Source of the DNA: Malacoraja senta
Lineage: Eukaryota
NCBI GenBank assembly: GCA_038087875.1
Contig: JAXLNO010001219.1
Span: forward strand, 1-64,000
Direction: 5' to 3'
DNA length: 64,000 nucleotides
The notes below the pieces were generated by a model. It did not search any database and was not told the DNA's origin. It was given only the letters and a program-made list of their open reading frames with translations. A program made the translations under genes and the position numbers. This document shows, piece after piece, positions 1 through 54,240 of the stretch (positions are counted from its first letter, which is position 1; each line of letters opens with the position of its first letter).

Positions 1-836
1 CAACGGGATGCCACAACTAGTCACATCTTTCCATCTCCTTCGCTTTTTGCGTTCCCTCCGCAACTCCCTGGTCAACACGTCCTCTCCCCCCCCCCTCCCC
101 TCGTCCCCAGGTACCTTCCCCTACAACTGCAGGAGATGCAACACCAGTCACTATATATCCCCCCCTTTACTCCGTCCATGGGCCTCAACAGTCTTTTCGG
201 GTGAGGCAGAGGGTGGCTTGCATCTCCTCTAACCTCATCTACTCTATCCGCTGTTCCAGGTGTGAACAAGCGGATATAGTAGATGGGAGACCAAGCGCAG
301 ACTCGGCGATCGTTTCGCTGAACAACTCCGCTCAGTCTGCCTCGGCCTACGCTACATCCCGATTGCTAAACACTTTTATTCCCCCTCCCATTCCCAAACT
401 GATCTTTCCGTCCTGGACCTCCTCCAGTGTCAGAGTGAGGCCAAAGGCAAATTGGAAAAACAGCGCCTCATATTTCGCTTGGGCAGCTTACAACCCAGCG
501 CTTTGAATATTGACATCTCTAACTTCAAGTAACCCTTGCTTTACTCCTTTCCATCCCGCCCCCATCCGAAACCTCCAATTAGATTCACCTGATAATATTT
601 TACTGATTGTACGCCTCGTTGTCACCTTCCCTTCAGCTGACAATGATTCAATCTACATTTCCCTTTAACATTGTCACCTTTGATCACTTGTTTTAACATC
701 TTATCCTTCCATTTCTCTTCTGTCACCCAGAACATGACTGTCAGGCTGGAGAAGGGTCTCGATCCGAAACTTCACCCACTCCTTCTCTCGAGAGATGCTG
801 CCGGCTCCGCTGAGTTCCCCCAGCATTTTGTGTCTC
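1..836 (+). mobile_element. Penelope-like retroelement 3' fragment (GIY-YIG endonuclease end plus pLTR-like tail)
   Basis: A frame not in the ORF track reads [17 protein letters not shown]...[12 protein letters not shown]...[21 protein letters not shown] (stop at about 530-532). A degenerate ctggagaagggtctcgatccgaaac motif follows at about 746. Near-identical copy at 28632-29467. Confidence 0.8.
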
Positions 837-1774
837 TCTTAAAGCGATCGTAATTAGTTTTCGCGATTAAATTACAAGGCATTGAATTGTGTTTTTGGCA
901 CGCTGGTCTTCATCAGTGAGAACATTCAGAATATAATTTGAGATAATATGCTTCAGACGTGCAGATGTTCAGTCCACACTTTGGGAATTGTGTTCAGCTT
1001 CAGTCACTCAGCTCCAAGAAAAGTTGAGATGGACAGCGTGCAGAAAGGTTTTAGGGCGACGTTGCCTGGACAGGATGGGATTGACGCAGGGAGCGATTGG
1101 ACAAACTCAGACTTCATTCCTTAGTGTGGAAATGATTGAGAGAGGAACTTATAGAAATGAATCAATCACGAGAAGCATGTTCATTTTCCCACGATGTGTG
1201 GAATCAAAAAGTGGAGGACAGAGGTAATGGGAACTATTTAAAGAGGGAGGAATAGTAAGGTGCCATTGACCGTAATGGCATGTTTTGTACAGATGAGTGG
1301 CCGAAGCTGAACACAATTCGCACAAGTTCGACCTCAATAACATATGTACAACTGAAACATAACATCCCAACATATGTTCTGAGGGACAACATTTTCCACA
1401 CATTGGGTAATATGTACATGGAACCTGCTGCCAGGGGAAGTTGTTGAGGCAGAATAGCAGCATTTAAAATAAATTTTGGATATTTGCGTAGATTGGGATC
1501 ATTGCGAGTGATAAATGAGAAACGCGGACATATGGAAATGTCATAGAAAGACATGTTGGTCGGCATTAATGAGCTGTTGTGATGGGCATCTTTCGGTTCT
1601 CAATAACTCTAACCTTCTTCGGTTTCTGCGCTTCGCACACTCCCAGAGATGTAGATGAGCCGGTGAGGTATCAACCGGACGGTTCGGGCTGAGATAAAGT
1701 GCTGCTGAGATTTAGCAAGTGTTTGGTTTTTAACAATTCATACAGGTGACTGAATATTTGGTCCATTCCCACAG

Positions 1775-2095
1775 AACCCATGTCTGCTCCTGTGCTCAGT
1801 TATCTGTCAGCAGCAAATGCCTCACGTCTTGGAGGCTCAGTGTCAGTGTCCTGTGAGTCTCTCCGTGGATCCCTTCCCATCCATTACACATGGTTTGAGA
1901 AGAACGAGCATTGGGTTTCAACGATCTTGCAAGGCAATCAACTGGATCTGAGTTGTGAAATCCTCAGAGGTGAACACCTTCGATATTACTGCACAGCCGC
2001 AAATAATCGTGCGACAAAATCCAGTGAAATAGTCAAGGTGAAAGTCTTCAAAGGAGCAGGAACGTGCAGTTATGTGACAGAAATGAACAATGCAG
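1775..2095 (+). CDS. Gene A exon: C2-type Ig domain (C2a), FcR-like/PECAM-like
   Basis: Acceptor cccacag|AA, donor GCAG|gtgagt, 321 nt, phase 1-1. Encodes EPMSAPVL...[16 protein letters not shown]...YYCTAAN. Confidence 0.9.
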
Positions 2096-3343
2096 GTGAG
2101 TGTTCCTCTCGTGTCCCTGAACCTGCTGCTATTCACCTTGTGGTGATGTTCATGTATTTCTTGTTATTTGCAGACGGCATCATTGCAGCCACCGTGAGCT
2201 CATGGTGTAAAATGCGAGAGTTTGTTTGGGGGACTGGCAAATAATTGCCCGTAGCTTCCACCATGGAGGTGTTGAGCAATTTCAGCAAAGGAGAGAAAGA
2301 CATGCACTTGTCATAAAGCGTTGAGTGCACTCCATCAAATTTCTGCCTTCTGCCTTAAAAATGCCGCTTGGCTGCCGCTTAAGGTCTCACAGTCACTTTG
2401 AGACATTGAAAGCAACCAAATGCATTCTGTTTGGATCCGCCATCATTTACAATCAAGGATGTACAATTTCATGATCATGTTCATGATTTTAACTGTTAAT
2501 TTGTGTTAAACTCCAGTAATATCACTAAATTAAATTGTAATCTACTTGGCCGTCACTCCATCAAGTATAACCCTTACTTTTGTCAAAGAGAATTTTGAAA
2601 TGAACTCCCAGTAGGTGTGGAGACGTTCAGATTGGAAGTCCAGAATAGAGTGTGAATGGTTTACATCAGAGACACCAAGCTTATACAATGCCAGCGTTTC
2701 TTAAACTATTTCAGTGCCATTCACCCTTGAGTCTTTATTACAAGATTTAATTCACCCTCCACTAAATATTCTTATGTTTTTTTGGTTATTATCATCTTAT
2801 TTTCACTTGTGCATAATTTTATATATAATTTATTTTGTCACATGAGCAAAAAACATGAATTAACTCATTCACCCCAAAATAATTTCATTCGCCCTTGGGT
2901 AAACCATTCATCAGTTTAAGAAGCACTGGCCGAGGCTACAATTTCGCCGAACACTTGTGTTTGGTCTGTCATGACCCAGAGTCGTACTTGATAGACACCC
3001 CGTTGATGTAGAGCAGCAGCAGTTTGCACCATCTGCACGATGCACTGCAGCAACTCACCAAGACTCCCAAGACATTACCTTCCAATTGCAACAGGCTCCG
3101 TGTTCAATGCATCATTCTTCACCATTCACACCCACATTAGCTGGGAAGCGCTTTGGAACGACGTGCAGATGGTGAGGGACGGTGTACAGTATCTGTCTCA
3201 TCGCAATCTAGGTGGAATTCAACAGAGTTAAGAAAATCATTGGGCGGACGCCCCTGTATACATTGATGTATACTATAATGTATATGTTTGTGAAAGGCTA
3301 ATTTTGCTCTTCAATCTATGAAAGAATTTTCCTTCAGTTTCAG

Positions 3344-3655
3344 GTGCACTGTGGGCAGAGAGCGAAGTACGAGGGGTTGTGGGAAGAGCGATCTCAATCG
3401 ATTGTCACTATGCAGCAGTGTACCGCTCACACACAAAATACTGGTGCCCTGGGACAAGTCGCCAGTGTACACATATAGTGGAAACAAATGGGAAACAAGG
3501 ACAGAGCGGAAGAGTGTCAATCACAGATAACCCGGCACGAGGAATATTTACTGTGACTGTGGAGGATCTTCACTCTGGAGATACAGGATGGTACAGATGT
3601 GGAATTATTACACCTGGCGAACCAACATTTAAAGTACATCTCCAAGTATCTGAAG
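3344..3655 (+). CDS. Gene A exon: CD300/pIgR-like V-type Ig domain (V4)
   Basis: Acceptor tttcag|GT, donor GAAG|gtaggt, 312 nt, phase 1-1. Motifs IDCHY, KYWC-x6-[24 protein letters not shown]. Confidence 0.93.
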
Positions 3656-4229
3656 GTAGGTTTCTCAGTGAGTGACTTCATGTCTCGACTTTGGCATCTG
3701 CATAAAACATTTGTTGGGTCACATATGGGAGCCTGGTGCACAGTTCTGGTCCCCGCTTTATAAAACAAAAGATGTGAAAGGTTTGGAGAGGTTACAGAAA
3801 AATGTCACCGGGATATTTAGTTGGAGGTTACAAATGCAACATGGAAACGGATCCTTCGGCCCACCGAGTCCACACCGACTAGCGATCACCGGTCGCACTA
3901 GTTCTATGTTATTCTACTTTCCCATTCGCTCCCTACACATAATTCTACAATACCGCCATTCTCACACCTCATTAGTGCAACATTATCACTATCAACAAGT
4001 TTATACAAGGAAATTTGAGAGTTGTTGATATTGATACTGTTGCACTAATGAAGTGTTTGAATGTTGGTATTGTAGAATTGTGGCAGAGTTTCAGATTAAA
4101 AGAAGATTAACTGCAGATGCTGGAAATATAAAACAAAGACAGATGGTGCTGCTGTGTATTGGTACAGTGGCAGACATGGTAGTTCTGCCAGCTGGGTGGA
4201 TGGAGAGACACAGAGATGTTCAAATCTGT

Positions 4230-4715
4230 TAAGTTGTGAGGAGAAGGTACAGGGAAGACTTACAAGGATGTTGCGATGACTTGACACTCAGGGAGGGATT
4301 GAGCAGATTAGGACTTTATTTCTTGGAGCGCAGGAGGATGAGGGATGATCTTATGGCAGGTAAAAAATCATGCGAGGAATAGATCGAGTTAATACACAGC
4401 CTTTTGCTCAGAGTAGGGGAATCGAGAACCGGAGGACATGGTTTTAATATGAGGGGGGAATGATTTAACAGGAACCTGGTGAGTCACGTTTTTACACAAA
4501 GGTTGGTAGGCACATGAAACGAACTGCCGACAGAAGTAGTTATGGCAGGTACTATCGTAACATTTAATAAAATATTGGACATGTACATGAATATGATATG
4601 TTTAGTGGGTTAAGGGCCAAGAAAGGGCAGGTGGAACTCGTGTAGATTGGGCGTGTTGGTCTGCGCGGGCAAGTTAGACCGAAGGGCCTGTTTCTACGCT
4701 GTATGACTCTATGAT
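4230..4715 (+). mobile_element. Degenerate CR1 LINE 3' fragment
   Basis: Decayed match to the 3' end of the CR1 ORF2 and UTR seen at 18650-19140. Paralogous copy at about 32860-33345. Confidence 0.65.
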
Positions 4716-4844
4716 TCTATGTAGATGGATGGGTCCGATTCCAAAATGGCGGCTCTGGCTAAGATACAGAGATGGTGGATATTGGCGAGTGTTTGATTTT
4801 CAGATGTTCACTCAGTTGTCTGACTGTTTGCTCCTTTCCCACAG

Positions 4845-5165
4845 ACCCCGTGTCTGTTCCTGTGCTTGGATTTCTGTCACCAGCCAATGTCTCCTGTGTC
4901 GGGGGCTCAATGACAGTGTCCTGTGAGTCGGTCAGTGGATCACCGCCCATTAGCTACAGCTGGTATGAAAAGACCCCATCTGTGGATTCAAAGATCTCAG
5001 ACCAAAATGCCCTGGATCTGCATTGTCAATCATTCAAACACCAGCACCATCAATATTATTGCACAGCCTCCAATAATAATGGAACAAAATCCAGTGAAAT
5101 GGTCAACGTGTCCATCTCCAACAGTGACGTGCCCTGCAGTTTTCTAGTGAAAATCAACGGCACTG
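4845..5165 (+). CDS. Gene A exon: C2-type Ig domain (C2b)
   Basis: Acceptor tcccacag|AC, donor ACTG|gtaagt, 321 nt, phase 1-1. Encodes DPVSVPVL...[16 protein letters not shown]...YYCTASN. Confidence 0.9.
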
Positions 5166-5931
5166 GTAAGTAGTGGGGGGGAATGAGGAGAAGAAGGGGA
5201 AGTGCGGGTGGGGGGTTCATCAGATTACAAGTGATAGAAGCAGAAATAGACCATTCAATCATGGCTGATCTATCTTCCCTTCTTCACCCCATTCTCCTGC
5301 TTTCTCCTCATAACCTCCGTCACCCTGAAATCCCTGCACGTTATTTAAGTAATTTATCAAGATTAATATGATGGAATTATGGCTCATTTGTCAGTACTTG
5401 GTTGTTGGGCTCCAGAAATAGAATTCGTAGTGCTGGTGTAGGCTAGCATCCTGTATAGAATTGCCTCTTGCATTTACACAGCTTTGAACTAGGTTTGCAG
5501 TGACATCAGTCCAAGCACATTCACTTTCCCACCACATGATCCACACACAGATATGGTAAGGGATCAGACATTATCAGTAAATGTGGCCACAGTTAAATCC
5601 TTGACGACGGTATCCCATTTACCAGCACCTCGTCCATTGCAGCAATTCAGGTACCTCCACCTTCTGGGTTTAAAAATATTTCTTGATACCCTTGAAACAT
5701 CCTGCTCCTTAACTTAACCATGTGTTCTCCATATTTACACATATCTATCGTGCAACATTTCCCAAAAATCCACTGTCTATGCAGCTCAGAGTTTTTGTGC
5801 ACCTGTAATTGGTTTCCCCTTCCTCACCTGTCCTGCATGGAATATTATAAAAACCTTATCGAACCCCTCCCCATAACTGCAATGTTTCATCCCAAGCAAC
5901 ACTTCTCTCAAGTCTCAAGTCAAATTGCAAC

Positions 5932-6260
5932 CTTTAGATTAGTTTATGGATACAGCGTGGAAACAGGCTCTTCGACCCACTCGGTGCACACCGTCCAGTC
6001 TTCACCAGTACACTAGTTCCATGGGGACCATTTACAAAGCCAATGAACCGGCAAACTTGCACTACTTTGTAATGCGGGGGGGGGGGAGGGGGGGAGGGGG
6101 GGAGGGGGGGAGGGGGGAGGGGGGAGGGGGGGACAGGAGCACTTGGAGAAAACCCACACGGTCACAGGGAGGTGGTAAAAATTCCGTACATCCGTAGTCA
6201 GGATCGAACCCGGGTCTCTGGCGTTGTAAGGCAGCAACTCTACCGCTGCGCCACTGTGCC
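5932..6260 (-). mobile_element. tRNA-derived SINE
   Basis: The minus strand starts gtggcgcagcggtagagttgctgccttac...ggttcgatcc (A and B boxes), like the other SINE copies in the window. Confidence 0.75.
6076..6132 (+). repeat. G-rich tract, (G6-8 A)n
   Basis: Directly visible runs of G separated by single A residues, inside the SINE. Confidence 0.9.
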
Positions 6261-6452
6261 GTCTACATCTGGCGCCAGAGTTGTTACCAGCACGCCTGCT
6301 TGTCGTAACATCTCCCATTTAATCAACTCACACTGAAGAAACATTATCCTGTCTGTTAAGCCTATCAACTACTTACATCGGAAAACCATACTCCTTTGTT
6401 CAACTGCAAGTGAAAAGCAGTGAAACTGACTTTTATTTCCTTGTTCCAACAG

Positions 6453-6501
6453 GTCATGAATATTCTTGTGAAAATTCGATAACATCCAATAACTCTGCAA
6501 G
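6453..6501 (+). CDS. Gene A exon: 49-nt stalk exon (GHEYSCENSITSNNSA)
   Basis: Acceptor ttccaacag|GT, donor AAG|gtaaac, phase 1-2. Paralogous exon of the same length and phase at 35101-35149. Confidence 0.8.
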
Positions 6502-8833
6502 GTAAACCACTCTGTTTCCAATGGAAGTTACAATATAGTAATTGCTGGTGTTTTGGTTGGGAATGCTTTATTTGGGAGAAATTTGTGCCTGCCTTTCACT
6601 GGCATTAAATGCCCTGAGAGTATTGATCTGAATGCACAGTGGCACAGCCGATAGAATCACAGCCTCACAACGCCACGACCCTGGTTCATTAGGTGCTGTC
6701 TGTGCGTGGTCTGCATGTTTTGCCTTGTATTGTGTTGGTTTAATTTAAGTGCTCCAGTTTCCTCCCAGCTCCCAAAGATGTGCCAGTTGTAAATTGCCCC
6801 GTGTGTACAGGACAGCGGTTGAATCTGTGCATAGGGGATGGGGCGGGGAGGGAGGGAGGGTGTTGGACGGTAGTGGTAGTTGATCAGAAAGTGGGGAAAA
6901 TAAAAATGGGATTGACAGAGGATCCGTGTGAATGTAGTTGACTGTCGGCACAGACCAGAAGGGCCAAATGGCCTGTTTCTATACTGTGTTTCTCCATGGG
7001 TCTTTGATCCAATGAAACCAAATATCGAAGCATAATCAAATTTTGTACGTCCAGCCATGATCACATTGAATGGCGGTGCTGGCTCAAAGGGCCGAATGGC
7101 CTACCCCTGCACCTCTTGTCTATTGTCTATTGTCTATTGTTTCAAGCCTGACACCAAATATAAATGTATCTCTTAAATATTCGTTAATAATATGTATTTA
7201 ACTTGCAAACCAATTATTAGTTAACTCTTCAGAAGGGGGATTACACTGGGTTTACATCTCATTGTGTTGTGTACATGCTTGGATGATAAGAACAAGTTCC
7301 TCCATTTGCTGCTTTTCAGAGAGCGCTTCCTGCAGTATTCACCATGACTTCTCCATCACTAACCTCATCCCATGCTGTGAGATGAATATAGTTGCCAAAC
7401 CCAAGTCTTGCAGTTTAGCTTGGTTGAGACTTGCTCTGGTGTGGTGCTGATAGGTAAATGCATTATGAATTATGGGCTAAGACACCCCACTTGATATCAC
7501 TTGTGGCAACACCTTGCCATTGATGGGGGTCACGCACCAACAATTCGCTGGCGCAGAATGTGAGAAAAGTCTTGAATCAGACCGAATACAGCGAACTGAG
7601 TTAACTCAATCAATCAATCAATCAATCAACCGTTATCGTCATCTTAAACATTTCACACATAAATAAAAACAATAAAAACACTGAAAAAATAAAAAAATAA
7701 AAATAAAAATAAAAAAAAATGAAACAATCCAGTCCCTGATAAAAACAATACGAATAGTTAAAAAGTGCAGGTAAAAAAACAGCAACATTAAAATACAAGT
7801 AAAAACAGTCATAAATAACTGACGCTCCCTTACACATTGAACCTTGAAAACATTGTTTTTTAAATTATCCCTGAATATTCCATCATAATACAGTCATGAA
7901 AGTGGGAACACTTTGTTATTTATCTTGTTACAATTGAAATAGATCTTGCTTTCTATCCCACTCAAGTGTTATGCTTGCGTTAGGAAATAAGAATATTAAT
8001 AAAAGGCACGTCGTTATGAGCGAACCTTTAATCGATTTTTCGAACACACACATACACACACCTACCGCGTTAATCCAAGTAATATCCAGGGGGTGAGATT
8101 AAGCATTATCATTTTTAATTTATTTTATTACTTGGCCTCATCTGTTTCCATATTTATTGTCCCACCTCCCTTCCAACATTAGAATGGATCCCTTTTAATT
8201 ATTCCTCTCTATCCATATGGATTTTATTATAATCTCCTTGCAGCTGCATATTCTTTCTTCCAGGGTATTACACTGTTCTTTGTATCTTTCACACATCCAC
8301 ATTTTCCCTTTCCCGTGACTCCCAGTCTGAAGAAGGGTCTCGACCCGAAACGTCACACATGGGGTCAGGCAGCAAAGATTCGGTGGCGCAGAAAGTGAGA
8401 AAACAGCCTTGAATCAGACCGAATACAGCGAACTGTGTTAATTGATGCTCCCTTACACATTGAACCTTGGAACCTCTCCCGCTGTGTTTCTCCAGCATTG
8501 CGTGTCTATCTACTCTGTAGTCACTGAATTCACTGCTCCATCTAATGACTTATTTCTCTGTCTTCTCCGAATCCATTTAACCGTGTAATCTCTGATACCC
8601 AGTCTTGTAGATATGCTCCAGCAAAGAGGTCAGTAATTGGTGATCATAGGTTGTCCCCCCACCCCCCACCCCCAGTCCAACACCCGTTCTTTCTCCAAGA
8701 TGATCTCCATTGGCTCTGCTGCTTCGCCCCGCTCCACTTCACCAAGATTATGAAGCAAATAACAGGTAAATGTTTCAAAGATAAACCGTCTCGTTTCCTC
8801 CCAGTGATTCTGTATCTCTTGCCCTTTGCCTAG

Positions 8834-8924
8834 TTACATCGCATGGAATGTGGGGCGCTGGTTGTTCTTTCTCCTGCTTGTGATCTGGAGTATCTCAACC
8901 GCGGTGTTCACAAGAGGCTCTAAG
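8834..8924 (+). CDS. Gene A exon: transmembrane segment with Arg (SYIAWNVGRWLFFLLLVIWSISTAVFTRGSK), activating type
   Basis: Acceptor ctttgcctag|T in phase 2, matching the stalk exon; donor AAG|gtaggt in phase 0. Hydrophobic stretch of about 25 aa; CGC (Arg) at 8856-8858. Confidence 0.75.
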
Positions 8925-9316
8925 GTAGGTTCTATTACCATCATGTTCATAAATTATAGGAGCAGAATTGGTCCATTCAACCCATTATACATAATCCGCC
9001 CCCAATCACGACTAATCTAGCCTTCGCTCCCGATCCATCCTCCTGCCTTCTCCGCATATCCCTTGACATCCTTATTTATGAAGAATATGAAAATCTCCGG
9101 CTTAAAAATATCAATTGATTTGGATAGGTACAAAAATACTGGAGTAACTCAGCGGGACAGGCAGCATCTCCGGAGTGAATTGATTTGGCCTCCACAGCCT
9201 CCTATGGTAATGTAATCCATTGATTCACCACCCTCTGCGCAAAACAATCCATTCTCTTCGCCGAATGTATCCAAACGGTTTCCATTAATGCTTTCAAATA
9301 TCCTGTCCATTGATAG

Positions 9317-9343
9317 AAACAAAAATCGTGCGCGTTTTCATAA
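9317..9343 (+). CDS. Gene A putative terminal coding exon (KQKSCAFS*), short tail with no Tyr motif
   Basis: Acceptor ccattgatag|AAA in phase 0 fits the TM donor. Downstream AATAAA at 9965 and 9982. The acceptor is weak, so the call is tentative. Confidence 0.45.
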   Translation, partial: KQKSCAFS

Positions 9344-9964
9344 CCTGAAGTTAAACCAAATCACTATGTAGATGATATCATGTGGTTTTGTCAGGTTGTA
9401 CGTGTGCTGGGTGGATTTCTGTGCGCGGTGTGGATTCGTTGGGGTCCATCCTCCAGACAGCCATGTGTTGGGGGTGGTCGGGTCAAATAAAGCGTGGTTC
9501 CCACTGTCAGTGAGTCTAATGACTTCATATTGTCTTTTGGAGAGACGCGATGAATCAGAACCTCGCCACTCGACACACGAATTACAATGAAGACTCCTAG
9601 CTTGCACCAACAGTGAGGGAATTCTGCACCGCGATGAAATATTTATGCATCATCCTGCTTTGTCAACTGATACCAATTGGACAGAATATATGTCTCTTGC
9701 AATTCAACGAATGGTTTCATGAAAGTAATGTTCCAAACTTTCCAAACCATATCTGTTTCTAAAACTCATTTACCGCACTGGTCTTAATGTTTGTCACCTC
9801 TTCCAAGGTTTCTTTCATCACCTTCGAACCATTGTTTTAACCTCTGCGTGGTTTGTGCTGCTCCAACGTCTTATACTCTGTTAAAATATATTATATGCAT
9901 TCAACTTCCTGGAAAAAAAATGTTTTCGCTGATAAATGAATAATTATGCATCAGGATGCTTCTT

Positions 9965-9987
9965 AATAAATTTTTGTTGTCAATAAA
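9965..9987 (+). terminator. Candidate polyadenylation signals of gene A
   Basis: AATAAA at 9965-9970 and 9982-9987, followed by a T/GT-rich stretch. Confidence 0.4.
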
Positions 9988-14993: not shown

Positions 14994-15928
14994 ATGAGGG
15001 CCAGGGCAGTTTACTGTTCTGGATCTCAGATGTGGGAAGTCATGGAGTCTGATAGCCCTCCAGACGTCCACATCTGCGCCAGGTGTATCGAGATGGGCTC
15101 CTAATGGACCGTATTAGGAACCTGGATCAGCAGCTCGATGACCTCCATCTGGTCAGGGAGAGCGAGGAAGTCATTGAGAGGAGTTACAGGGATGTGGTCA
15201 CTCCAACACCACAGGAGGCAGGCAAGTGGATCACGGTTGGGAGAGGCAAGGGGCACAGGCAGGGACTAGAGAGTACCCCGGTGGCTGTACACCTTGACAA
15301 TAAGTACTCCTGTTTGAGCACTGTTGGGGTGGACAGCCTACCTGGGGTTAGCGACAGCGGCCGGGCCTCCGGTATAGAGACCGGCCCTGTTGCTCAGAAG
15401 GGAAAGGAAAAGAAGAGGAGGGCAATACTAATAGGGGACTCTATAGTTAGGTGGTCAGACAGGCGATTCTGTGGACGCAGTCGGGAGACCTGGATGGTAG
15501 TTTGCCTCCCTGGTGCCAGGGTCTGTGATGTGTCTCAACGTGTCCAAGATATCCTGAAAGGGCAGGGAGAGGAGCCCGAGGTCGTGGTACATAGAGGTAC
15601 CAATGACATAGGTAAAAAAAGAGAAGAGGTCCTGAAAGGAGAATTTAGGGAGTTAGGAGGGGACTTAAAGAGAAGGACAGAAAAGGTAACAATCTCGGGA
15701 TTACTGCCTGTGCCACGCGACAGTGAGAGTAGGAATGGAGCGAGGTGGAGGATAAATGCGTGGCTGAAGGACTGGTGCAGAGGGCAGGGATTCAAATTTG
15801 TGGATCATTGGGACCTCTTTTGAGGAAGGTGCGACCTGTACAAAAAGGATGGGTTGCACTTAAACCTGAGGGGGACCGATATCCTGGCGGGGAGATCTGC
15901 AAAGGCTACTGGGGAGACTTTAAACTAG
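14994..15928 (+). pseudogene. CR1 ORF1 (Cys-rich N-terminus plus SGNH esterase), disrupted
   Basis: MRARAVYC...CARC, then a frameshift near 15098 into ORF 15083-15823 with GDS and GTNDIG motifs. Premature TGA at 15821, followed by DGLHLN. Confidence 0.8.
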
Positions 15929-16015
15929 AATGGTTGGGGGGAGGGACTCAAATAGAGAATGCTATTAGACAGTGTGTGAGGCAGGAGGCAGAGAAGGAAA
16001 GCACTCAGACCCAAC

Positions 16016-19000
16016 ATGTGGGGGGGGGGAGAAGAAAACAATAATAAACAGAGAATAAGAGGTGGTGGGGTTCTTAAATGGGTGAGCAGAGAAACAGAGG
16101 GGTGTAAAATGCGGGCGGAAGCAATAGGTAGCAAGGTGAAACGTAAAAGTGGCAGGCAGACAAATCCAGGGCAAAAATCAAAAAGAGCCACTTTTCAACA
16201 TAATTGTATAAGGGGTAAGAGCGTTGTAAAAACAAGCCTGAAGGCTTTGTGTCTCAATGCAAGGAGCATTCTTAATAAGGTGGATGAGTTGAACGTGCAG
16301 ATAGCAATTAATGATTATGATATAGTTGGGATCACGGAGACATGGCGCCAGGGTGACCAAGGCTGGGAGCTGAACATCCAGGGATATTCAATATTCAGGA
16401 GGGATAGAGAGAAAGGAAAAGGAGGTGGGGTAGCGTTGCTGGTTAGAGAGGAGATTAACGCAGTGGAAAGGAAGGACATTAGCTTGGAGGATGTGGAATC
16501 GGTATGGGTAGAGCTGCGAAACACTAAGGGGCAGAAAACGCTGGTGGGTGTTGTGTTCAGGCCACCTAGCAGTAGTAGTGAAGTTGGGGATGGCATCAAA
16601 CAGGAAATTAGAAATGCGTGCAACAAAGGCAAAACAGTTATAATGGGTGACTTCAATCTACATATAGATTGGGTGAATCAAATTGGCAGGGGTGCTGAGG
16701 AAGATGATTTCTTGGAATGTATGCGGGATAGTTATCTAAACCAACATGTAGAGGAACCAACGAGAGAGCAGGCTATTCTAGACTGGGTATTGAGTAATGA
16801 GGAAGGGTTAGTTAGCAGTCTTGTTGTGCGTGCCCCCTTGGGCAAGAGTGACCATAATATGGTTGAGTTCTTCATTAGGATGGAGAGTGACATTGTTAAT
16901 TCAGAAACAACGGTTCTGAACTTAAAGAAAGGTAACTTTGAGGGTATGAGACGTGAATTGGCCAAGATTGACTGGCAATTAGTTCTAAAAAGGTTGACGG
17001 TGGATATGCAATGGAAGGCATTTAAAGACTGCATGGATGAACTACAAAAATTGTTCATCCCAGTTTGGCAAAAGAATAAATCAGGGAAGGTAGTGCATCC
17101 GTGGATAACAAGGGAAATCAGGGATAGTATCAAAGCAAAAGATGATGCGTACAAATTAGCCAGAAAAAGCAGCATACCTGAGGACTGGGAGAAATTCAGA
17201 GACCGGCAGAGGAGGACAAAGGGCTTAATTAGGAAAGGGAAAATAAATTATGAAAGGAAACTGGCAGGGAACATAAAAACTGACTGCAAAAGTTTTTATA
17301 GATATGTGAAGAGAAAGAGATTAGTTAAAACAAATGTAGGTCCCTTGCAGTCAGAAACAGGTGAATTGATCATGGGGAACAAGGATATGGCGGATCAATT
17401 GAATATCTACGTTGGTTCCGTCTTCACTAAGGAAGACATAAATAATCTGCCGGAAATAGCAGGGGGCCGCGGGTCAAAGGAGATGGAGGAACTGAGTGAA
17501 ATCCAGGTTAGGTGGGAAGTGGTGTTGGGTAAATTGAATGAATTAAAGGCCGATAAATCACTAGGGCCAGATAGGTTGCATCCCAGAGTACTTAAGGAAG
17601 TAGCTCCAGAAATAGTGGATGCATTAGTGATAATTTTTCAAAAGTCTTTAGATTCTGGAGTAGTTCCTGAGGATTGGAGGGTAGCAAACGTAACCCCACT
17701 TTTTAAGAGGGAGAGAGAAAACGGGGAATTACAGACCAGTTAGTCTAACATCGGTAGTGGGGAAAGTGCTAGAGTCAGTTACTAAAGATGGGATAGCAGC
17801 ACATTTGGAAAGTGGTGAAATCATTGGACAAACTCAGCATGGATTTACGAAAGGTAAATCGTGTCTGACGAATCTTATAGAATTTTTCGAGGATGTAACT
17901 AGTAGAGTGGATAGGGGAGAACCAGTGGATGTGTTGTATCTGGACTTTCAGAAGGCTTTCGACAAGGTACCACATAAGAGATTAGGATACAAACTTAAAT
18001 CACACGGTATTGGGGGTTCAGTATTGATGTGGATAGAGAACTGGCTGGCAAACAGGAAGCAAAGAGTAGGAGTAAACGGGTCCTTTTCACAATGGCAGGC
18101 AGTGACTAGTGGGGTACTGCAAGGCTCAGTGCTGGGACCCCAGCTATTTACAATTTATATTAATGATCTGGACGAGGGAATTGAAAGCAACATCTCCAGG
18201 TTTGCGGATGACACTAAGCTGGGGGGCAGTGTTAGCTGTGAGGAGGATGCTATGAGACTGCAAGGTGATTTGGATAGGCTGGGTGAGTGGGCAAATGTTT
18301 GGCAGATGCAGTATAATGTGGATAAATGTGAGGTTATCCACTTTGGTGGCAAAAACGGGAAGGCAGACTATTATCTAAATGGTGGCCGATTAGGAAATGG
18401 GGAGATGCAGCGAGACCTGGGTGTCATGGTACACCAGTCATTGAAAGTAGGCATGCAGGTGCAGCAGGCAGTGAAGAAAGCGAATGGTATGTTGGCCTTC
18501 ATAGCAAGAGGATTTGAGTATAGGAGCAGCGAGGTTCTACTGCAGTTGTACGGGGTCTTGGTGAGACCACACCTGGAGTATTGCGTACAGTTTTGGTCTC
18601 CAAATCTGAGGAAGGACATTATAGCCATAGAGGGAGTGCAGAAAAGGTTCACCAGACTGATTCCTGGGATGTCAGGACTTTCATATGAAGAAAGACTGGA
18701 TAGACTTGGCTTATACTCGCTAGAATTTAGGAGTTTGAGAGGGGATCTTATAGAAACGTACAAAATTCTCATGGGGTTGGACAGGCTAGATGCAGGAAGA
18801 TTGTTCCCGATGTTGGGGAAGTCCAGGACAAGGGGTCACAGCTTAAGGATAAGGGGGAAATCCTTTAAGACCGAGATGAGTAAAAACGTTTTCACACAGA
18901 GAGTGGTGAATCTCTGGAACTCTCTGCCACAGAGCGTAGTTGAGGCCAGTTCATTGGCTATATTTAAGAGGGAGTTAGATGTGGCCCTTGTGGCTAAGGG

Positions 19001-19040
19001 GATCAGGGGGTATGGAGAGAAGGCAGGTACGGGATACTGA
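16016..19040 (+). pseudogene. CR1 ORF2 (AP endonuclease plus reverse transcriptase), one frameshift
   Basis: Motifs [36 protein letters not shown] 5-nt deletion near 17705 relative to the copy at 42-45 kb splits the ORF. Confidence 0.92.
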
Positions 19041-19479
19041 GTTGGATGATCAGCCATGATCATATTGAATGGCGGTGCAGGCTCGAAGGGCCGAATGGCC
19101 TACTCCTGCACCTATTTTCTATGTATCTATGTATCTATGAGCACTTGGACAGGTCCACGTATGGGGAAGGTTTGGGGAGTTTCGGGTTGAACGTGGGAAG
19201 ATCTGACTAACTTGGATGAGCACATTGGTCTAACGCGTTGGGGAGAAGGGCCTGTTTCCGTGACGTATGACTGTGATCATCTGACCCAACCATTTGTTAA
19301 ATATAACCCTGATCCTTTCACACTGTAACGTGTCGAGCTGCTGCTGGCTCGCTGTGGTTCACGATCTCAAGTCCTGTTCCCTTCTTCGTCGTTGCTATTT
19401 GAGAGATGCGGTTGTATCTGAGAGCTACGAGCTGAGCGACAGACTGACAAGTGCTGACCTCGTCACTGTGGATAAAACA

Positions 19480-40500: not shown

Positions 40501-43500
40501 TCCGGGGGTCTGGAAGCAGCAGCGATTGTCTCCACCACAGCTCCACCCGCTCCGGACTCGGCTAGCCCCGCGACGGTGAGTAGTCCGCAGCTCCGCAACT
40601 GGAGCCCCAGGTCGTTCCTGCTGGAGGCCGCTCCACGTTGCCCAGCCCCAACGACAACGGAGACCCGACAAAGAAAAGGTCGGGTCTCCCGTGCAGGGGA
40701 AAGATTTTAAAGTCCCCCCCCCACCCCCACCGCCACCCTCCCACACACATACCCCGACAAAAAAAAAAAAAAAAAACTACATAAAAACGAGACAAAAATA
40801 ATAAAGAGACAGACGGACTGCAGAGGCCGCTGCAAACGAGTCGCGCCGCCCACCGTTGGATGATAAACTAAACTAAACTAAACCAAACTCAGCTGAACTA
40901 AACTAAAGTAATCATTGCTATTAATGTGTAACAGTTCCCATGCATTGTTTGTGAAGGAGGAGGGAGGGTTCCTTAATGTTTGGGCGCAATTGCTCTTGAA
41001 CCAGTTTCATGATCGTTGGTCAATGTCACCTTACTGTGAGCAGATTAGCTGCTGCGTTACTCACCGAAACAGACTCTACACCTCATCTCCTTTGCTGCAT
41101 ACTTCAAAAAAATCATGAAAGGTGCCATATAAATTGTTGACTTTTGTTCTTTACTGAAGGCCAAGAATCAATGATGAGCCATATCTCACCCTTCCCTATT
41201 CTCTGTCCGACAGGATCACTTACATAGTTGCGTCTGGTGTCGCTGTGCTTCTCCTGATTCTCATCATTGCCTTCTTTTGGTACCAAAAGCGTAAAACCAA
41301 GGGTGAGTTTCTGATTTCCATTAAATAATTTCACAATACTTGTCTCAGTTCCCTCCAGAATGTCAAGAGATTTAATTCTGATCTAATCAACAAATGCCCT
41401 GCATTAAAGTAATACAGTGTTGGAGGAAGCATGGATGATCAATAATGCTATCACGTTTGATGCTATAATGGTGACTCGGTGACAAAAACTATTCTTTTAA
41501 CATCATTGTACTTAAACTGTCTGAGTGTGAAATGGCAGAGATGCGTGAGAACTAAGAGGCTAGGTAGAAGTAAGATTTACATCGATACTCTCATCCTCTC
41601 AGCTGTTAGAATATGCTTCGTGTGATTAGCTGTTGTATTTCAAATCAGATTAAGTCGTGTTTATTGTCACATGCACAAGCATGATGAAGCACTGTTACAA
41701 TGAAGATCACACCTGCAGCCTTACAGGGACATAAACAACGTACAACATACCTGCCTCACACAGAGGGCGGTGGGTATATGACAGGAGCTGCCAGAGGAGG
41801 TAGTTGAGGCAGGGCAGGTCTAGCCTGGACAGGTAATCCAAGATGTGAACACCCATGAACTTGAAGCTGCCAACTATCTTCACTGCCGATGAAAATGTGA
41901 AAGTTCACTGAGCTGTTCCTCAGTCAGAGAGCATTAGTGGAAAGTAAAACAGTAAACATTTCACATCCAAGACCCATTACAACAGGGAAAGAGGGAAAAG
42001 AGGGGGGAACCTCATTGAAAGATCAAATAGTGAAAGGCCTAGATACAGTAGATGTAGAATGGATGTAGAAGGGACTCAAATAGAGAATGCTATTAGACAG
42101 TGTGTGAGGCAGGAGGCAGAGAAGGAAAGCACTCAGACCCAACATGTAGGGGGGAAAGAAGAAAATAATAATAAAAAGAGAATAAGAGGTGGTGGGGTTC
42201 TTAAATGTGTGAGCAGAGAAACAGAGGGGTGTCAAATGCGGGCGGAAGCAATAGGTAGCAAGGTGAAAAGTAAAAGTGGCAGGCAGACAAATCCAGGGCA
42301 AAAATCAAAAAGAGCCACTTTTCAACATAATTGTATAAGGGGTAAGAGCGTTGTAAAAACAAGCCTGAAGACTTTGTGTCTCAATGCAAGGAGCATTCGT
42401 AATAAGGTGGATGAGTTGAACATGCAGATAGCAATTAATGATTATGATAGTTGGGATAACGGAGACATGACTCCAGGGTGACCAAGGCTGGGAGCTGAAC
42501 ATCCAGGGATATTCAATATTCAGGAGGGATAGAGAGAAAGGAAAAGGAGGTGGGGTAGTGTTGCTGGTTAGAGAGGAGATTAACGCAGTGGAAAGGAAGG
42601 ACATTAGCTTGGAGGATGTGGAATCGGTATGGGTAGAGCTGCGAAACACTAAGGGGCAGAAAACGCTGGTGGGTGTTGTGTACAGGCCACCTAGCAGTAG
42701 TAGTGAAGTTGGGGATGGCATCAAACAGGAAATTAGAAATGCGTGCAACAAAGGCAAAACAGTTATAATGGGGGACTTCAATCTACATATAGATTGGGTG
42801 AATCAAATTGGCAGGGGTGCTGAGGAAGAGGATTTCTTGGAATGTATGAGGGATAGTTATCTAAACCAACATGTAGAGGAACCAACGAGAGAGCAGGCTA
42901 TTCTAGACTGGGTATTGAGTAATGAGGAAGGGTTAGTTAGCAGACTTGTTGTGCGTGCCCCCTTGGGCAAGAGTGACCATAATATGGTTGAGTTCTTCAT
43001 TAGGATGGAGAGTGACATTGTTAATTCAGAAACAACGGTTCTGAACTTAAAGAAAGGTAACTTTGAGGGTATGAGACGTGAATTGGCCAAGATTGACTGG
43101 CAATTAGTTCTAAAAGGGTTGACGGTGGATATGCAATGGAAGGCATTTAAAGACCGCATGGATGAACTACAAAAATTGTTCATCCCAGTTTGGCAAAAGA
43201 ATAAATCAGGGAAGGTAGTGCATCCGTGGATATCAAGGGAAATCAGGGATAGTATCAAAGCAAAAGATGATGCGTACAAATTAGCCAGAAAAAGCAGCAT
43301 ACCAGAGGACTGGGAGAAATTCAGAGACCAGCAGAGGAGGACAAAGGGCTTAATTAGGAAAGGGAAAATAGATTATGAAAGGAAACTGGCAGGGAACATA
43401 AAAACTGACTGCAAAAGTTTTTATAGATATGTGAAGAGAAAGAGATTAGTTAAAACAAATGTAGGTCCCTTGCAGTCAGAAACAGGTGAATTGATGATGG

Positions 43501-46500: not shown

Positions 46501-47379
46501 GACCCTTCTTCAGACTGAGAGTCAGGTGAAAGGGAAACAAGAGATATAGAAGGTACATGGAACAAATGAATGAAATATATGAATGAATGATGTTTAAACC
46601 TGTTCATAATATGGCTCTATCGACAACATATTTTCCAGAATTCAAGTGCAATACATCACACGGTGAAGACAACAATGAAATCCAGGTAAAAATGTGAAAT
46701 ATAAATTCTCTGAGTGATGAAAAATATATAATATTGAATTATCTGTGTTTACACAGGCCATTTAGCAACACCAGTCCACTCCAGTTAAGAGAACCAGCAC
46801 AGAAACTGGCCCTTTGGCCCACCGAGTCCACGCCGACCGGTGACCCACGCACACAAAAACTATCCTACGCACACTAGGGACAATTTGCAATTATGCCAAA
46901 CCAATTAACCTACAAACATGTTGTAGGCACTGTCAGGCAACAACTCTACCGCTGCTCCACCATGCTGCGCTATCTTTGTGTTGTAAACAGCAGCAATGGC
47001 CTGTTCTGTACACTGAACAGTTTGAGACCTACTTTGTAATAGACATCTGTTGAGGACCTTTCAAATCTATTAGGTTGTAAAATTGGATTTTGTTATATTT
47101 TAGGAAATGGCAGTGTTGGAAGGGAACCACGTTGATGCAAATCTGCAGCAAATTGGAAACAACAGGGCAGCTGACCATTTGGATAACAATGAAGGTGGAA
47201 TCACGTATGCAGTGGTGAAATGTCAAAGGAAGTCGAGATCAAGGCACCCTGAGACTCACAACACTGTTCTCTACGCAGATGTTAATTTTCATCGCAACTG
47301 CCCAAAGGGCAATCGGAAACCCCACTCTACTAGGGCTCCAGAGAACTCTGAAACAATTTATGCCTCTGTTGTTTCTTAG
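19480..47379 (+). CDS. Gene B: complete 11-exon inhibitory CD300/pIgR-like (MDIR-like) receptor, L-V-V-V-C2-V-C2-stalk-TM-ITIM/ITIM/ITSM, 798 aa
   Basis: Exons of 37+315+315+315+321+312+321+49+89+47+276 = 2397 nt join in frame with canonical AG/GT sites and consistent phases, with no internal stop. Confidence 0.85.
20946..21260 (+). CDS. Gene B exon V1 (CD300/pIgR-like V domain)
   Basis: Acceptor tttcag|AT, donor GACG|gtacgt, 315 nt, phase 1-1. Motifs IDCHY, KYWC-x6-C, DTGWYRCG. Confidence 0.93.
21585..22440 (+). mobile_element. CR1 LINE 3' fragment
   Basis: Decayed RT C-terminus (ORF 21920-22333) plus 3'UTR. Paralogous insertion at 60465-61320. Confidence 0.8.
23436..23750 (+). CDS. Gene B exon V2
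   Basis: Acceptor atttcag|CT, donor GACG|gtacgt, 315 nt, phase 1-1, same V motifs. Confidence 0.93.
23950..25285 (-). mobile_element. CR1 LINE 3' fragment
   Basis: Minus-strand ORFs 24106-24480 and 24482-24994 (FADD motif) and a (ctatgttt)n tail at 23950. Paralogous insertion at 62836-64000. Confidence 0.85.
25480..26600 (+). mobile_element. Penelope-like fragment
   Basis: [15 protein letters not shown] at about 26043 and ctgaagattggtctcgaccggaaacgtc at 26503. Paralog of 28350-29467. Confidence 0.75.
27684..27998 (+). CDS. Gene B exon V3
   Basis: Acceptor ccctttcag|CT, donor GACG|gtacgt, 315 nt, phase 1-1. Confidence 0.93.
28350..29467 (+). mobile_element. Penelope-like fragment
   Basis: Same sequence as 1-836 at offset 28631, extended further 5'. 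Confidence 0.78.
30406..30726 (+). CDS. Gene B exon C2a
   Basis: Same splice sites as 1775-2095. One amino-acid difference (GEHLR versus GDHLR). Confidence 0.9.
31975..32286 (+). CDS. Gene B exon V4
   Basis: Same splice sites and identical translation to 3344-3655. Confidence 0.93.
33484..33804 (+). CDS. Gene B exon C2b
   Basis: Acceptor ttacccacag|AA, donor ACTG|gtaagt, 321 nt, phase 1-1. About 10 amino-acid differences from the gene A C2b. Confidence 0.9.
34636..34906 (-). mobile_element. tRNA-derived SINE
   Basis: Occupies the position equivalent to the SINE at 5932-6260. Confidence 0.65.
35101..35149 (+). CDS. Gene B stalk exon ([16 protein letters not shown])
   Basis: Acceptor ttccaacag|GA, donor AAG|gtaaac, 49 nt, phase 1-2. 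Confidence 0.82.
35395..36420. mobile_element. Penelope-like element with inverted RT and endonuclease parts
   Basis: Minus-strand GIY-YIG/pLTR part at about 35395-36190. Plus-strand RT piece ([29 protein letters not shown]) at 36244-36420. Confidence 0.7.
37150..39065 (+). mobile_element. CR1 LINE, 5'-truncated and frameshifted
   Basis: ORFs 37263-37919, 37973-38437 (FADD) and 38439-38690, with a (ctatgttt)n tail at about 39030-39069. An older CR1 3' piece lies at about 36600-37010. Confidence 0.88.
39675..39975 (+). mobile_element. tRNA-derived SINE whose tail is interrupted by a 0.9-kb insert
   Basis: SINE body ends at ctgtatctctaaa. An (AAACT)n tail reappears at about 40865. Confidence 0.65.
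39976..40860. other. Unclassified GC/CpG-rich 0.9-kb insertion
   Basis: Sharp GC-rich core at about 40190-40740 with an A-run at 40758-40776, absent from the gene A intron. Confidence 0.5.
41214..41302 (+). CDS. Gene B transmembrane exon ([30 protein letters not shown]), uncharged
   Basis: Acceptor gtccgacag|G in phase 2, donor AAGG|gtgagt in phase 1. Hydrophobic core followed by a basic stop-transfer stretch, KRKTK. Confidence 0.88.
42071..45268 (+). mobile_element. Young 5'-truncated CR1 LINE with an 870-aa open ORF2 segment, nested in an older CR1 3' fragment
   Basis: Highly similar to 15943-19138. 2-nt deletion near 42450, ORF 42558-45170. Older CR1 sequence flanks it at 42000-42070 and 45268-45590. 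Confidence 0.92.
45617..45990 (-). mobile_element. Penelope-like 3' fragment
   Basis: Reverse complement of [19 protein letters not shown] plus the pLTR tail. Confidence 0.65.
46639..46685 (+). CDS. Gene B cytoplasmic exon 1 ([16 protein letters not shown])
   Basis: Acceptor attttccag|AA, donor CAG|gtaaaa, 47 nt, phase 1-0. It exactly bridges the TM exon and the terminal exon. Confidence 0.75.
47104..47379 (+). CDS. Gene B terminal exon with ITIM (ITYAVV), ITIM (VLYADV) and ITSM (TIYASV)
   Basis: Acceptor atattttag|GAA in phase 0. Motifs at 47200, 47266 and 47353; stop TAG at 47377-47379. Confidence 0.88.
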   Translation, partial: EMAVLEGNHVDANLQQIGNNRAADHLDNNEGGITYAVVKCQRKSRSRHPETHNTVLYADVNFHRNCPKGNRKPHSTRAPENSETIYASVVS

Positions 47380-53077: not shown

Positions 53078-54240
53078 TAGGTTTGTAGGTTAATGTGCAC
53101 AGTAAATTGTATATGGGGTGAACACTGGTTGGCGCGGTCTCAGTGGGCCGAAGAGCCTGTTTCCACGCTGTATCTATAAAGTTTTCTTGCCAATTGCACA
53201 CTCCAGAAGTAGATGGATAACAGTTTTGTCCAGAGCACGGCTGCCTTGTGCAGATCTGTGGTTGTGCAACACAACGCAACGCAAAAAGGATCTGACTTTG
53301 GAGCCCTTCCCACCACCACCCAACGTAGGATGTTCACAGTCGGCTTGCAAAACCGTCGAGGGGGAAGTACCATAGACTTAATTCTGCAGTTTGCTTGCCG
53401 GTTTGCAAGCATGCAGCTCCCATGTTGCTACCCAGGGTTCAATCCTTGTTCTTGCCTGCAAGGTAAGTTGAAATATATGTCGGACAATCACACATTGGCA
53501 CAGCAGGTAGAGCCGCTGCCGCACAGCATCCGAGTCCCAGGTTCGATACTGACCTCGAGTGCTGTCTGGAAATCATTTGTAACCAATGATGTAGAATTTC
53601 ATGATCACGGCAGGATTAAAAACGTATTAATTTGTGTGAATCTCTGGAGGAACTCCAGTAATCGCACAACATTAAAGTGAATCTGCTTGGCCGTCACTCC
53701 ATATTTTCCTTACTTTTGTCAAAATTATTTTGAAATGTATCTCCCAGTCGGTGTGGAGACGCTCAGGAGGGAAGTCCAGAAGAGAGTGTGAATGGTTTAC
53801 ATCAGCGTGGCCAAGCAAAACCTGGGCCACAGTTTCGCTGAACACTTGTGCTTGGTCTGTCATGACCCAGAATCGCGCTTGATAGACACCCCATCCTCAA
53901 CCTCCCCCGCTGATGCAGAGCAGCAGCAGTTTAGCACGATGCACTGCAGCAACTCACCAAGACTCCCTCGACAGCGCCTTGCAATTGCAAAAGGCTCCGT
54001 GTTCAAGGCATTATTCTTCACCATTCCCACCAACACTGGCTGGGAAGTGCTTTGGAACGACCTGTGCAGGTGGTGAGGGACGGTGTACAGTATCTGTCTC
54101 TCATCGCAATCTAGGTGGAATTCAACACAGTTACGAAAATGATTGGGCGGTCTCCCCTGTACACAGTGATGTATATTATAATGTATCTGTTTGTGAAAGG
54201 CTAATTTTCCTCTTCAAATTATGAAATATTTAACCTTCAG

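What the first reader, a model, noticed from the sequence alone, without database searches (positions are those of the whole stretch)
8834..9343. Hidden activating tail: Arg near the outer end of the TM and an almost absent cytoplasmic domain
Seen in sequence: a phase 2-0 exon, SYIAWNVGRWLFFLLLVIWSISTAVFTRGSK, fits the stalk donor exactly, and a candidate 8-aa last exon follows. Established knowledge: an Arg near the extracellular end of the TM mediates pairing with the FcR-gamma ITAM adaptor in LILRA, PIR-A, FcalphaRI, GPVI and NKp46, whereas activating mammalian CD300 members mostly use a mid-TM Lys. Inference: gene A is an adaptor-coupled activating receptor carrying CD300-like domains.
Basis: partly seen in the sequence, partly recalled or inferred. 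Interest (0 to 1): 0.7.

Follow-up and report, generated by a model that had tools for sequence, protein, structure and literature searches.

The report
Arg-bearing membrane anchor of skate receptor

Summary
The transmembrane exon at 8834-8924 is confirmed. It has good splice sites and the reading phase required by the upstream stalk exon (6453-6501). No such exon arose in 300 shuffles under strict criteria. Its only relatives among 1.84 billion proteins are NCBI models from the skate Rhinoraja longicauda. These carry the same stalk|TM junction at 80% identity.

Five R. longicauda genomic copies keep the AG, the GT, the open frame and the Arg. The conserved last exon is 9543-9590 (RRDESEPRHSTHELQ*), followed by a conserved AATAAA. 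This gives a 20-residue tyrosine-free tail. In this gene its acceptor has an unusual G at -3, so RNA data are still needed.

The Arg sits about position 3 of the helix and is followed by 18 uncharged residues. That is the geometry described for FcR-gamma-coupled receptors. Adaptor coupling is plausible but untested.

Gene A is the activating-type partner of the ITIM-bearing gene B. Another note of this scan reports a similar Arg-TM signature 12 kb beyond this window. Verdict: a new member of a known kind.

The parts
1775..2095 (+). Gene A exon C2a (Ig C2/I-type, phase 1-1). The gene's 5' part lies outside the window.
   Evidence: Pfam matches are Ig_C17orf99, Ig_3 and Ig_2. It is collinear with P0004.
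3344..3655 (+). Gene A exon V4 (V-set domain of the pIgR/CD300 type).
   Evidence: Pfam V-set, E 2e-13. The best PDB sequence matches are pIgR chains by summed score over 3-4 domains; single-domain pIgR D1 and CD300/CMRF35 chains score alike (E about 1e-12 to 1e-18), followed by NKp44 and TREM2.
4845..5165 (+). Gene A exon C2b (FCRL-type Ig domain).
   Evidence: Pfam Ig_3 and Ig_2. The best PDB match is Fc receptor-like protein 5, E 5e-46 summed over 5 stretches.
6453..6501 (+). Stalk exon, G-HEYSCENSITSNNSA-(S). It is phase 1 to 2 and contains a membrane-proximal Cys.
   Evidence: The sequence was read directly. Its homologue in gene B lies at about 35101-35149 and ends in the same phase. R. 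longicauda homologues are listed.
8834..8924 (+). Transmembrane exon (phase 2 to 0): (S)YIAWNVGRWLFFLLLVIWSISTAVFTRGSK.
8856..8858 (+). CGC codon of the intramembrane Arg. It is followed by 18 uncharged residues.
   Evidence: The sequence is. The Arg is kept in all 5 R. longicauda copies. Its position in the helix was worked out.
9317..9343 (+). It is not supported by conservation and lies inside the TM-to-last-exon intron.
   Evidence: The acceptor AG reads GG in both aligned R. longicauda copies. The acceptor scores weakly on a rough scale.
9543..9590 (+). Conserved last coding exon, RRDESEPRHSTHELQ*. In this gene its acceptor is ggAG, where 7 other copies have gcAG.
9965..9970 (+). AATAAA polyadenylation signal, 375 nt after the stop codon.
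   Evidence: An AATAAA lies 375-387 nt after the stop in all 7 copies examined.
41214..41302 (+). Context: TM exon of the paired gene B, (R)[29 protein letters not shown]. It has no charged residue in the helix and is phase 2 to 1.
47114..47379 (+). Context: ITIM-bearing reading frame of gene B (ITYAVV, VLYADV, TIYASV).
   Evidence: The frame needs the acceptor at 47113.

Best explanation
Exon 8834-8924 is the transmembrane exon of gene A. Gene A is a multi-Ig receptor of the skate MDIR type, combining pIgR/CD300-type V domains with FCRL-type C2 domains. Within the window the gene splices C2a-V4-C2b-stalk-TM-last exon into 379 in-frame residues.

The helix carries one Arg about three residues in from its outer end. 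The cytoplasmic tail is short and tyrosine-free, most likely the 20 residues TRGSKRRDESEPRHSTHELQ.

Gene A is the activating-type partner of gene B. Gene B has a 99.5-100% identical C2a-V4 region but an uncharged TM and an ITIM-bearing tail.

The exon, its junction with the stalk, the Arg and the short tail are shown. It is inferred that the Arg pairs in the membrane with the aspartate pair of a dimeric ITAM adaptor. The geometry best fits an FcR-gamma-like chain. On this reading the adaptor is needed for stable surface expression and supplies the signal.
For: Exon reality:
- The splice sites and phase fit.
- It is the only candidate in the 13.9 kb interval. Shuffles gave 0 of 300 (strict) and 2 of 300 (relaxed).
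- phmmer of the 30 residues against 1.84e9 proteins found two R. longicauda models at 80% identity over the full length, placed at the C-terminus. Both have the same stalk|TM junction. Two more models turned up (sequences).
- Five genomic copies in R. longicauda are 90-91% identical. All keep the AG, the GT, the open frame and the Arg.
- The exon has 10 of 91 variable columns and no gaps. The flanks have about 36% variable or gapped columns.

Gene model:
- The 379-residue splice product is collinear with P0004 residues 380-760 at 77% identity.
- The AATAAA is conserved.

Paired partner.

Mechanism, from established knowledge:
- All FcR-gamma partners with a basic TM residue carry an Arg in the N-terminal TM segment (position 3 in Fc-alpha-RI). 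DAP12 partners of type I topology carry a central Lys (PMC1440944).
- NxxR-type TMs with short tails associate with FcR-gamma in frog and mammals (PMC2413239).
- Here the Arg falls at position 3 of the best 19-21-residue window.
Against: - No transcript evidence was found. A 55-residue stalk-TM-tail query hit no short predicted protein. The R. longicauda proteins are automatic models of unknown RNA support, and one of them (P0004) is fused to a TRIM gene.
- Variable sites in the exon fall 5:3:2 over codon positions, so there is no classic signature of purifying selection.
- The Asn of the window's N-V-G-R is Thr in all five R. longicauda copies, so the NxxR motif is not conserved.
- With only 18 uncharged residues after it, the Arg could sit at the membrane interface rather than being buried.
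- Gene A's last-exon acceptor has G at -3, and the gene's 5' end is outside the window, so its integrity is unproven.
- No adaptor gene was examined.
Confidence: 0.6

Rival explanations
1. The exon is real, but the Arg is only an interfacial flanking residue. The receptor would then be a non-signalling or decoy form, like the MDIR forms that lack motifs, and would need no adaptor.
For: Only 17-18 apolar residues follow the Arg, and the best 17-residue hydrophobic core excludes it. The Asn of the NxxR motif is not conserved. From my memory of the Cannon 2006 abstract, MDIR4 and MDIR5 lack signalling motifs.
Against: From my memory of their sequences, FcR-gamma partners such as Fc-alpha-RI and NKp46 have about 16-17 apolar residues after the Arg, and one search places the Fc-alpha-RI Arg at TM position 3. 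The Arg is invariant in 6 of 6 copies while 6 other residues of the exon change. An extracellular-side Arg next to I-A-W-x-V-G goes against the positive-inside rule unless it has a role.
Confidence: 0.2
2. Gene A in this genome is decaying or mis-spliced. The C-to-G change at -3 of the conserved last-exon acceptor would divert splicing to 9317 (KQKSCAFS*) or 9545 (TR*), or the gene would be a pseudogene.
For: Seven other copies have gcAG, and gene A alone has ggAG. A neighbouring copy is clearly a deletion remnant.
Against: All six in-window exons are open and in frame. Every alternative acceptor still gives a short tyrosine-free tail, so the functional class would not change. The splice score is approximate and built from remembered frequencies.
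Confidence: 0.12
3. The open segment is a chance ORF in an intron, and both this reading and the automatic R. longicauda models are wrong.
For: There is no direct RNA evidence. Intron flanks are also fairly conserved, at 67-83%.
Against: Shuffles gave 0-2 of 300. Six copies keep the splice sites, the frame and the hydrophobic character with no indel. Without this exon the gene would have no membrane anchor, and no other candidate exists.
Confidence: 0.04

Closest known systems
Skate modular domain immune-type receptors (MDIR; Cannon et al. 2006, Immunogenetics 58:362, PMID 16738934)
   Same: It is a skate multigene cluster. The ectodomains mix pIgR/CD300-like V domains with FcR-like C2 domains in varying numbers. 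[quoted passage not shown] From my memory of the 2006 abstract, MDIR1 has a positively charged TM residue and MDIR2 and MDIR3 carry ITIMs.
   Different: The published MDIR sequences could not be fetched, and the paper is not held. Identity with MDIR1, or even similarity of the TM segment, is therefore untested. No Raja eglanteria protein appeared among the matches to this TM module.
FcR-gamma-coupled receptors with an NxxR-type TM (LILRA2, PIR-A, NKp46, GPVI, OSCAR, Fc-alpha-RI; Xenopus XFL TM1)
   Same: [quoted passage not shown] The receptor is paired with inhibitory relatives. The window's copy even reads N-V-G-R.
   Different: There is no significant sequence similarity to those TMs (one search found only skate proteins). 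The Asn is replaced by Thr in all R. longicauda copies. The ectodomain family is different, and association with an adaptor is untested.
Mammalian activating CD300 members (for example CD300b, CD300e)
   Same: The V domain belongs to the same pIgR/CD300/TREM group. The receptor has a charged TM residue and a short tail.
   Different: From my own knowledge, CD300 proteins have a single V domain and mostly a mid-TM Lys or Glu. Here there is a multi-domain V/C2 ectodomain and an outer Arg.
Teleost paired Ig receptors (LITR, NITR, DICP, PIGRL)
   Same: They are expanded clusters of activating and inhibitory forms with shuffled Ig domains and charged TM residues. This comparison rests on my own knowledge.
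   Different: They have different domain families and belong to a different lineage. No sequence match to this TM module was found.

Membership tests
Skate MDIR family | The ectodomain is assembled from pIgR/CD300-like V domains and FcR-like C2/I-type domains in variable number. | tested here: met
   V4 matches pIgR and CD300 chains. C2b matches FCRL5. R. longicauda relatives with the same TM module have V-V-C2, V-C2-C2 and C2-V-C2 layouts.
Skate MDIR family | It is a large multigene cluster in a skate with activating-type forms (charged TM) and inhibitory forms (ITIM). | tested here: met
   The window holds gene A (Arg TM), gene B (uncharged TM plus an ITIM reading frame), a remnant copy and the start of gene C. 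The nearest relatives lie in a cluster at 31.94-32.29 Mb of one R. longicauda chromosome.
Skate MDIR family | Sequence relatedness to the published MDIR1-5 cDNAs of Raja eglanteria. | not testable with these tools
   The paper is not held.
FcR-gamma-coupled Arg-TM (NxxR) receptors | [quoted passage not shown] | tested here: met
   The Arg falls at position 3 of the best 19-21-residue window and is followed by 18 uncharged residues. The criterion comes from PMC1440944.
FcR-gamma-coupled Arg-TM (NxxR) receptors | A conserved Asn three residues before the Arg. | tested here: inconclusive
   The window has N-V-G-R. All five R. longicauda copies have T-V-G-R.
FcR-gamma-coupled Arg-TM (NxxR) receptors | A short cytoplasmic tail without tyrosine motifs. 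| tested here: met
   The tail is 20 residues with no Tyr. The alternative acceptors give 13 or 7 residues, also without Tyr.
FcR-gamma-coupled Arg-TM (NxxR) receptors | Physical, Arg-dependent association with FcR-gamma. | not testable with these tools
   This needs co-expression and co-immunoprecipitation.
CD300 family proper | A single V domain on a stalk, with a mid-TM Lys or Glu in activating members. | tested here: not met
   At least three Ig exons precede the stalk, two of them of the C2 type. The charged residue is an outer Arg.

The most novel reading that the evidence does not exclude
The skate Arg-TM plus short-tail cassette is the cartilaginous-fish homologue of the tetrapod NxxR exon that couples LRC, FCRL and SLAM-family receptors to FcR-gamma. 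That coupling module would then date to the jawed-vertebrate ancestor. It behaves as a portable cassette: at least five ectodomain layouts in R. longicauda share it at 93-100% identity.
Probability: 0.12. Interest if true: 0.6.

Novelty: new member of a known kind. Interest (0 to 1): 0.3.

Why it matters
The result fixes the 3' gene model of an unannotated activating-type receptor in a skate immune-receptor cluster. It also corrects the tail from 13 to a probable 20 residues. One TM/tail cassette turns out to be shared by receptors with different Ig-domain layouts. This gives a concrete construct for asking whether the pairing of an outer-leaflet Arg with an acidic adaptor already operated in cartilaginous fish. 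It does not reveal a new principle, because paired activating and inhibitory MDIR receptors were described in skates in 2006.

Tried and rejected
- A word-based search with the 55-residue stalk-TM-tail peptide, looking for short transcript-derived fragments, found nothing.
- A look-up of earlier findings by sequence was blank.
- An Rfam scan of the window found nothing.
- Three of the five phmmer hits (P0001, P0002, P0005) are tandem-repeat proteins in which a weak partial match is multiplied over the repeats. I rejected them as irrelevant.
- The MDIR paper and a Cannon review are not held. Literature searches for adaptors in cartilaginous fish gave nothing useful.
I dropped this once the conserved exon at 9543 and the conserved AATAAA at 9965 were found.
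- I considered the N-V-G-R motif as evidence of homology with the tetrapod NxxR TM. I downgraded it because the Asn is not conserved.
- Full-length searches with a spliced gene A protein were not run. The spliced sequence has no reference, and I did not type long sequences.

Full report
**What is in the window**

All genes lie on the + strand. The window holds a tandem cluster of Ig-receptor genes with large internal duplications.

Gene A runs off the 5' end of the window. Inside the window it has these exons:
- C2a, 1775-2095
- V4, 3344-3655
- C2b, 4845-5165
- a 49-base stalk exon, 6453-6501

Gene B has a leader near 19468, V exons at about 20924, 23414 and 27662, and then its own C2a, V4, C2b and stalk.

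A and B are 99.5-100% identical over window positions 1-4000. They are 93-96% identical over 4000-5200 and about 75-80% around the stalk. After about 6740 no similarity is found.

**Checking the observation**

After cctttgcctag comes T TAC ATC GCA TGG AAT GTG GGG CGC TGG ... TCT AAG, followed by gtaggt. The stalk exon ends ...GCA AG|gtaaac, which is phase 2. The join therefore gives Ser and then YIAWNVGRWLFFLLLVIWSISTAVFTRGSK.

Gene B's stalk ends in the same phase. It joins an uncharged TM exon at 41214-41302 in the same way, which is an internal control for the phase logic.

The exon has no paralogue in the window. It lies outside the repeat that starts at 8945.

I ran a scan of the 13.9 kb after the stalk donor. 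It looked for phase-compatible open segments with usable splice sites and a hydrophobic span, and found only this exon. Dinucleotide-preserving shuffles produced such an exon in 2 of 300 trials (relaxed) and 0 of 300 (strict). Over the whole window, both strands and all three phases, one other candidate met the strict criteria, in the same phase on the + strand. The scan printed counts only, so I take it to be gene B's TM exon without having checked its coordinates. The splice weights in that scan are approximate and came from memory.

**Relatives elsewhere**

I ran phmmer with the 30 residues against 1.84 billion representative proteins. It gave two real hits, both at 80% identity over the full 30 residues. 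Three other hits were tandem-repeat proteins and are irrelevant.

The two real hits are NCBI models of the skate Rhinoraja longicauda, XP_078277018.1 and XP_078277019.1. Both end ...[16 protein letters not shown] | SYIAWTVGRWLLFLLLLIWSISIAFFTRASK | RRDKSEPGHSAHELQ.

Region searches added two more models with the same C-terminus. Their layouts are V-V-C2 and V-C2-C2, and the second is named 'Fc receptor-like protein 5'.

Their genomic loci (L001-L003) all lie within 31.94-32.29 Mb of one chromosome. Together they hold five copies of the exon. The copies are 90-91% identical to the window. Every copy keeps the AG, the GT, the open frame and the Arg.

Across the six copies the exon has 10 of 91 variable columns and no gap. 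The 200-base flanks have about 36% variable or gapped columns. The variable sites fall 5:3:2 over codon positions, and most changes swap one hydrophobic residue for another. The exon is therefore conserved as a hydrophobic, Arg-bearing open frame rather than residue by residue.

No transcript-level evidence was found. The RNA support behind the NCBI models is unknown.

**The last exon**

All homologues end with an exon that lies in the window at 9543-9590. It reads AGA CGC GAT ... CAA TGA, which is RRDESEPRHSTHELQ*.

With this exon the six in-window exons splice in frame to 379 residues. These are collinear with residues 380-760 of P0004 at 77% identity, end to end. An AATAAA lies 375-387 bases after the stop in all seven copies examined.

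There is one caveat. Gene A's acceptor is ttttggAG, whereas seven other copies, including the remnant in this window, have ttttgcAG. On my rough scale the site drops from 6.2 to 0.2. Which site this particular gene uses therefore needs RNA data. Every option gives a short tail without tyrosine, of 20, 13 or 7 residues.

**How it most likely works**

Several things are shown directly. The protein is a type I membrane protein. One Arg sits at position 3 of the best 19-21-residue hydrophobic window, followed by 18 uncharged residues and then T-R-G-S-K-R-R. There is no signalling motif in the tail. A sister gene has an almost identical C2a-V4 region, an uncharged TM and a reading frame with three ITIM-like motifs.

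Established knowledge supports the next step:
- Activating immune receptors assemble with dimeric ITAM adaptors through one basic TM residue and an aspartate pair.
- FcR-gamma partners carry an Arg in the N-terminal TM segment, at position 3 in Fc-alpha-RI.
- Type I DAP12 partners carry a central Lys. Swapping Arg and Lys cuts assembly several-fold (Feng et al. 2006, PMC1440944).
- NxxR-type TMs with short tails bind FcR-gamma in Xenopus and mammals (Guselnikov et al. 2008, PMC2413239; PMC4536121).

It is inferred that gene A pairs through its Arg with an FcR-gamma-like (or CD3-zeta-like) dimer and signals through it. The window's N-V-G-R fits the NxxR motif, but the Asn is Thr in all five R. 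longicauda copies. I give the motif little weight.

**Comparison with known families**

The V exon matches pIgR chains best by summed multi-domain score; single-domain pIgR D1 and CD300 chains score alike, followed by NKp44 and TREM2. The C2 exon matches FCRL5.

An earlier follow-up note of this scan (s1-140164) gives this mix as the defining feature of the modular domain immune-type receptors (MDIR) of the clearnose skate. [quoted passage not shown] From my memory of the 2006 abstract, MDIR1 has a positively charged TM residue. That paper is not held, so I could not compare sequences.

The follow-up in s1-140164 independently filed a neighbouring gene as MDIR5-type. Another first-reader note (s1-141187) reports an Arg-TM with a tyrosine-free tail of about 20 residues 12 kb beyond this window. 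That agrees with the tail length found here, but I could not check it.

**Verdict**

The TM exon and its Arg are real. The proposed last exon is probably wrong. Adaptor coupling is a reasonable but untested inference. The object is a new, unannotated member of a known family, so interest is modest.

The most novel reading left open is that this cassette is homologous to the tetrapod FcR-gamma-coupling TM exon and is shuffled among ectodomains. I give that about 0.12.

Noticed in passing
window 53572-54825: This is a remnant of a second activating-type gene. A V4-like exon (54234-54541) is fused at 54541/54543 directly to the homologue of position 9318. The stretch 3639-9317, which holds C2b, the stalk and the TM exon, is deleted. 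The last exon (54768-54815, RRDESEAGHSTHELQ*) and its good gcAG acceptor survive.
   Followed up: partly
window 47100-47115: Gene B's TM exon ends in phase 1. The first AG before the ITIM exon (47103) puts the frame into an early stop. The ITIM frame needs the weaker acceptor 10 bases further on (47113), or an unseen small exon in between.
   Followed up: partly
window 9541-9543: Gene A alone has G at -3 of the conserved last-exon acceptor (ggAG). Seven other copies in two genomes have gcAG.
   Followed up: yes
window 15926-19141 and 42055-45271; L001 25552-27769 and 2871-5088: Two 97.6% identical copies of a LINE-like element with a reverse-transcriptase-like ORF (an 899-residue open frame at 42471-45167) lie in the window. 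One sits in gene B's intron after the TM exon. Fragments of the same element, 90% identical, sit in the TM-to-last-exon intron of the R. longicauda genes.
   Followed up: partly
P0004 (XP_078277019.1, R. longicauda): This NCBI model joins a TRIM69-like RING/B-box/coiled-coil/partial SPRY half to a C2-V-C2-stalk-TM(Arg)-tail half. It looks like a chimeric gene model.
   Followed up: no
window 1-4000 vs 28632-32631: The two stretches are 99.5-100% identical across 4 kb, introns included. Identity then steps down to 93-96% and lower. This could be recent gene conversion, or an assembly duplication that should be excluded.
   Followed up: partly
L001-L003 (R. longicauda CM130186.1, 31.94-32.29 Mb): The same TM/tail cassette, 93-100% identical at the protein level, ends genes with different Ig layouts, including a 938-residue product. 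Two copies end three residues early (…SAHE*).
   Followed up: partly
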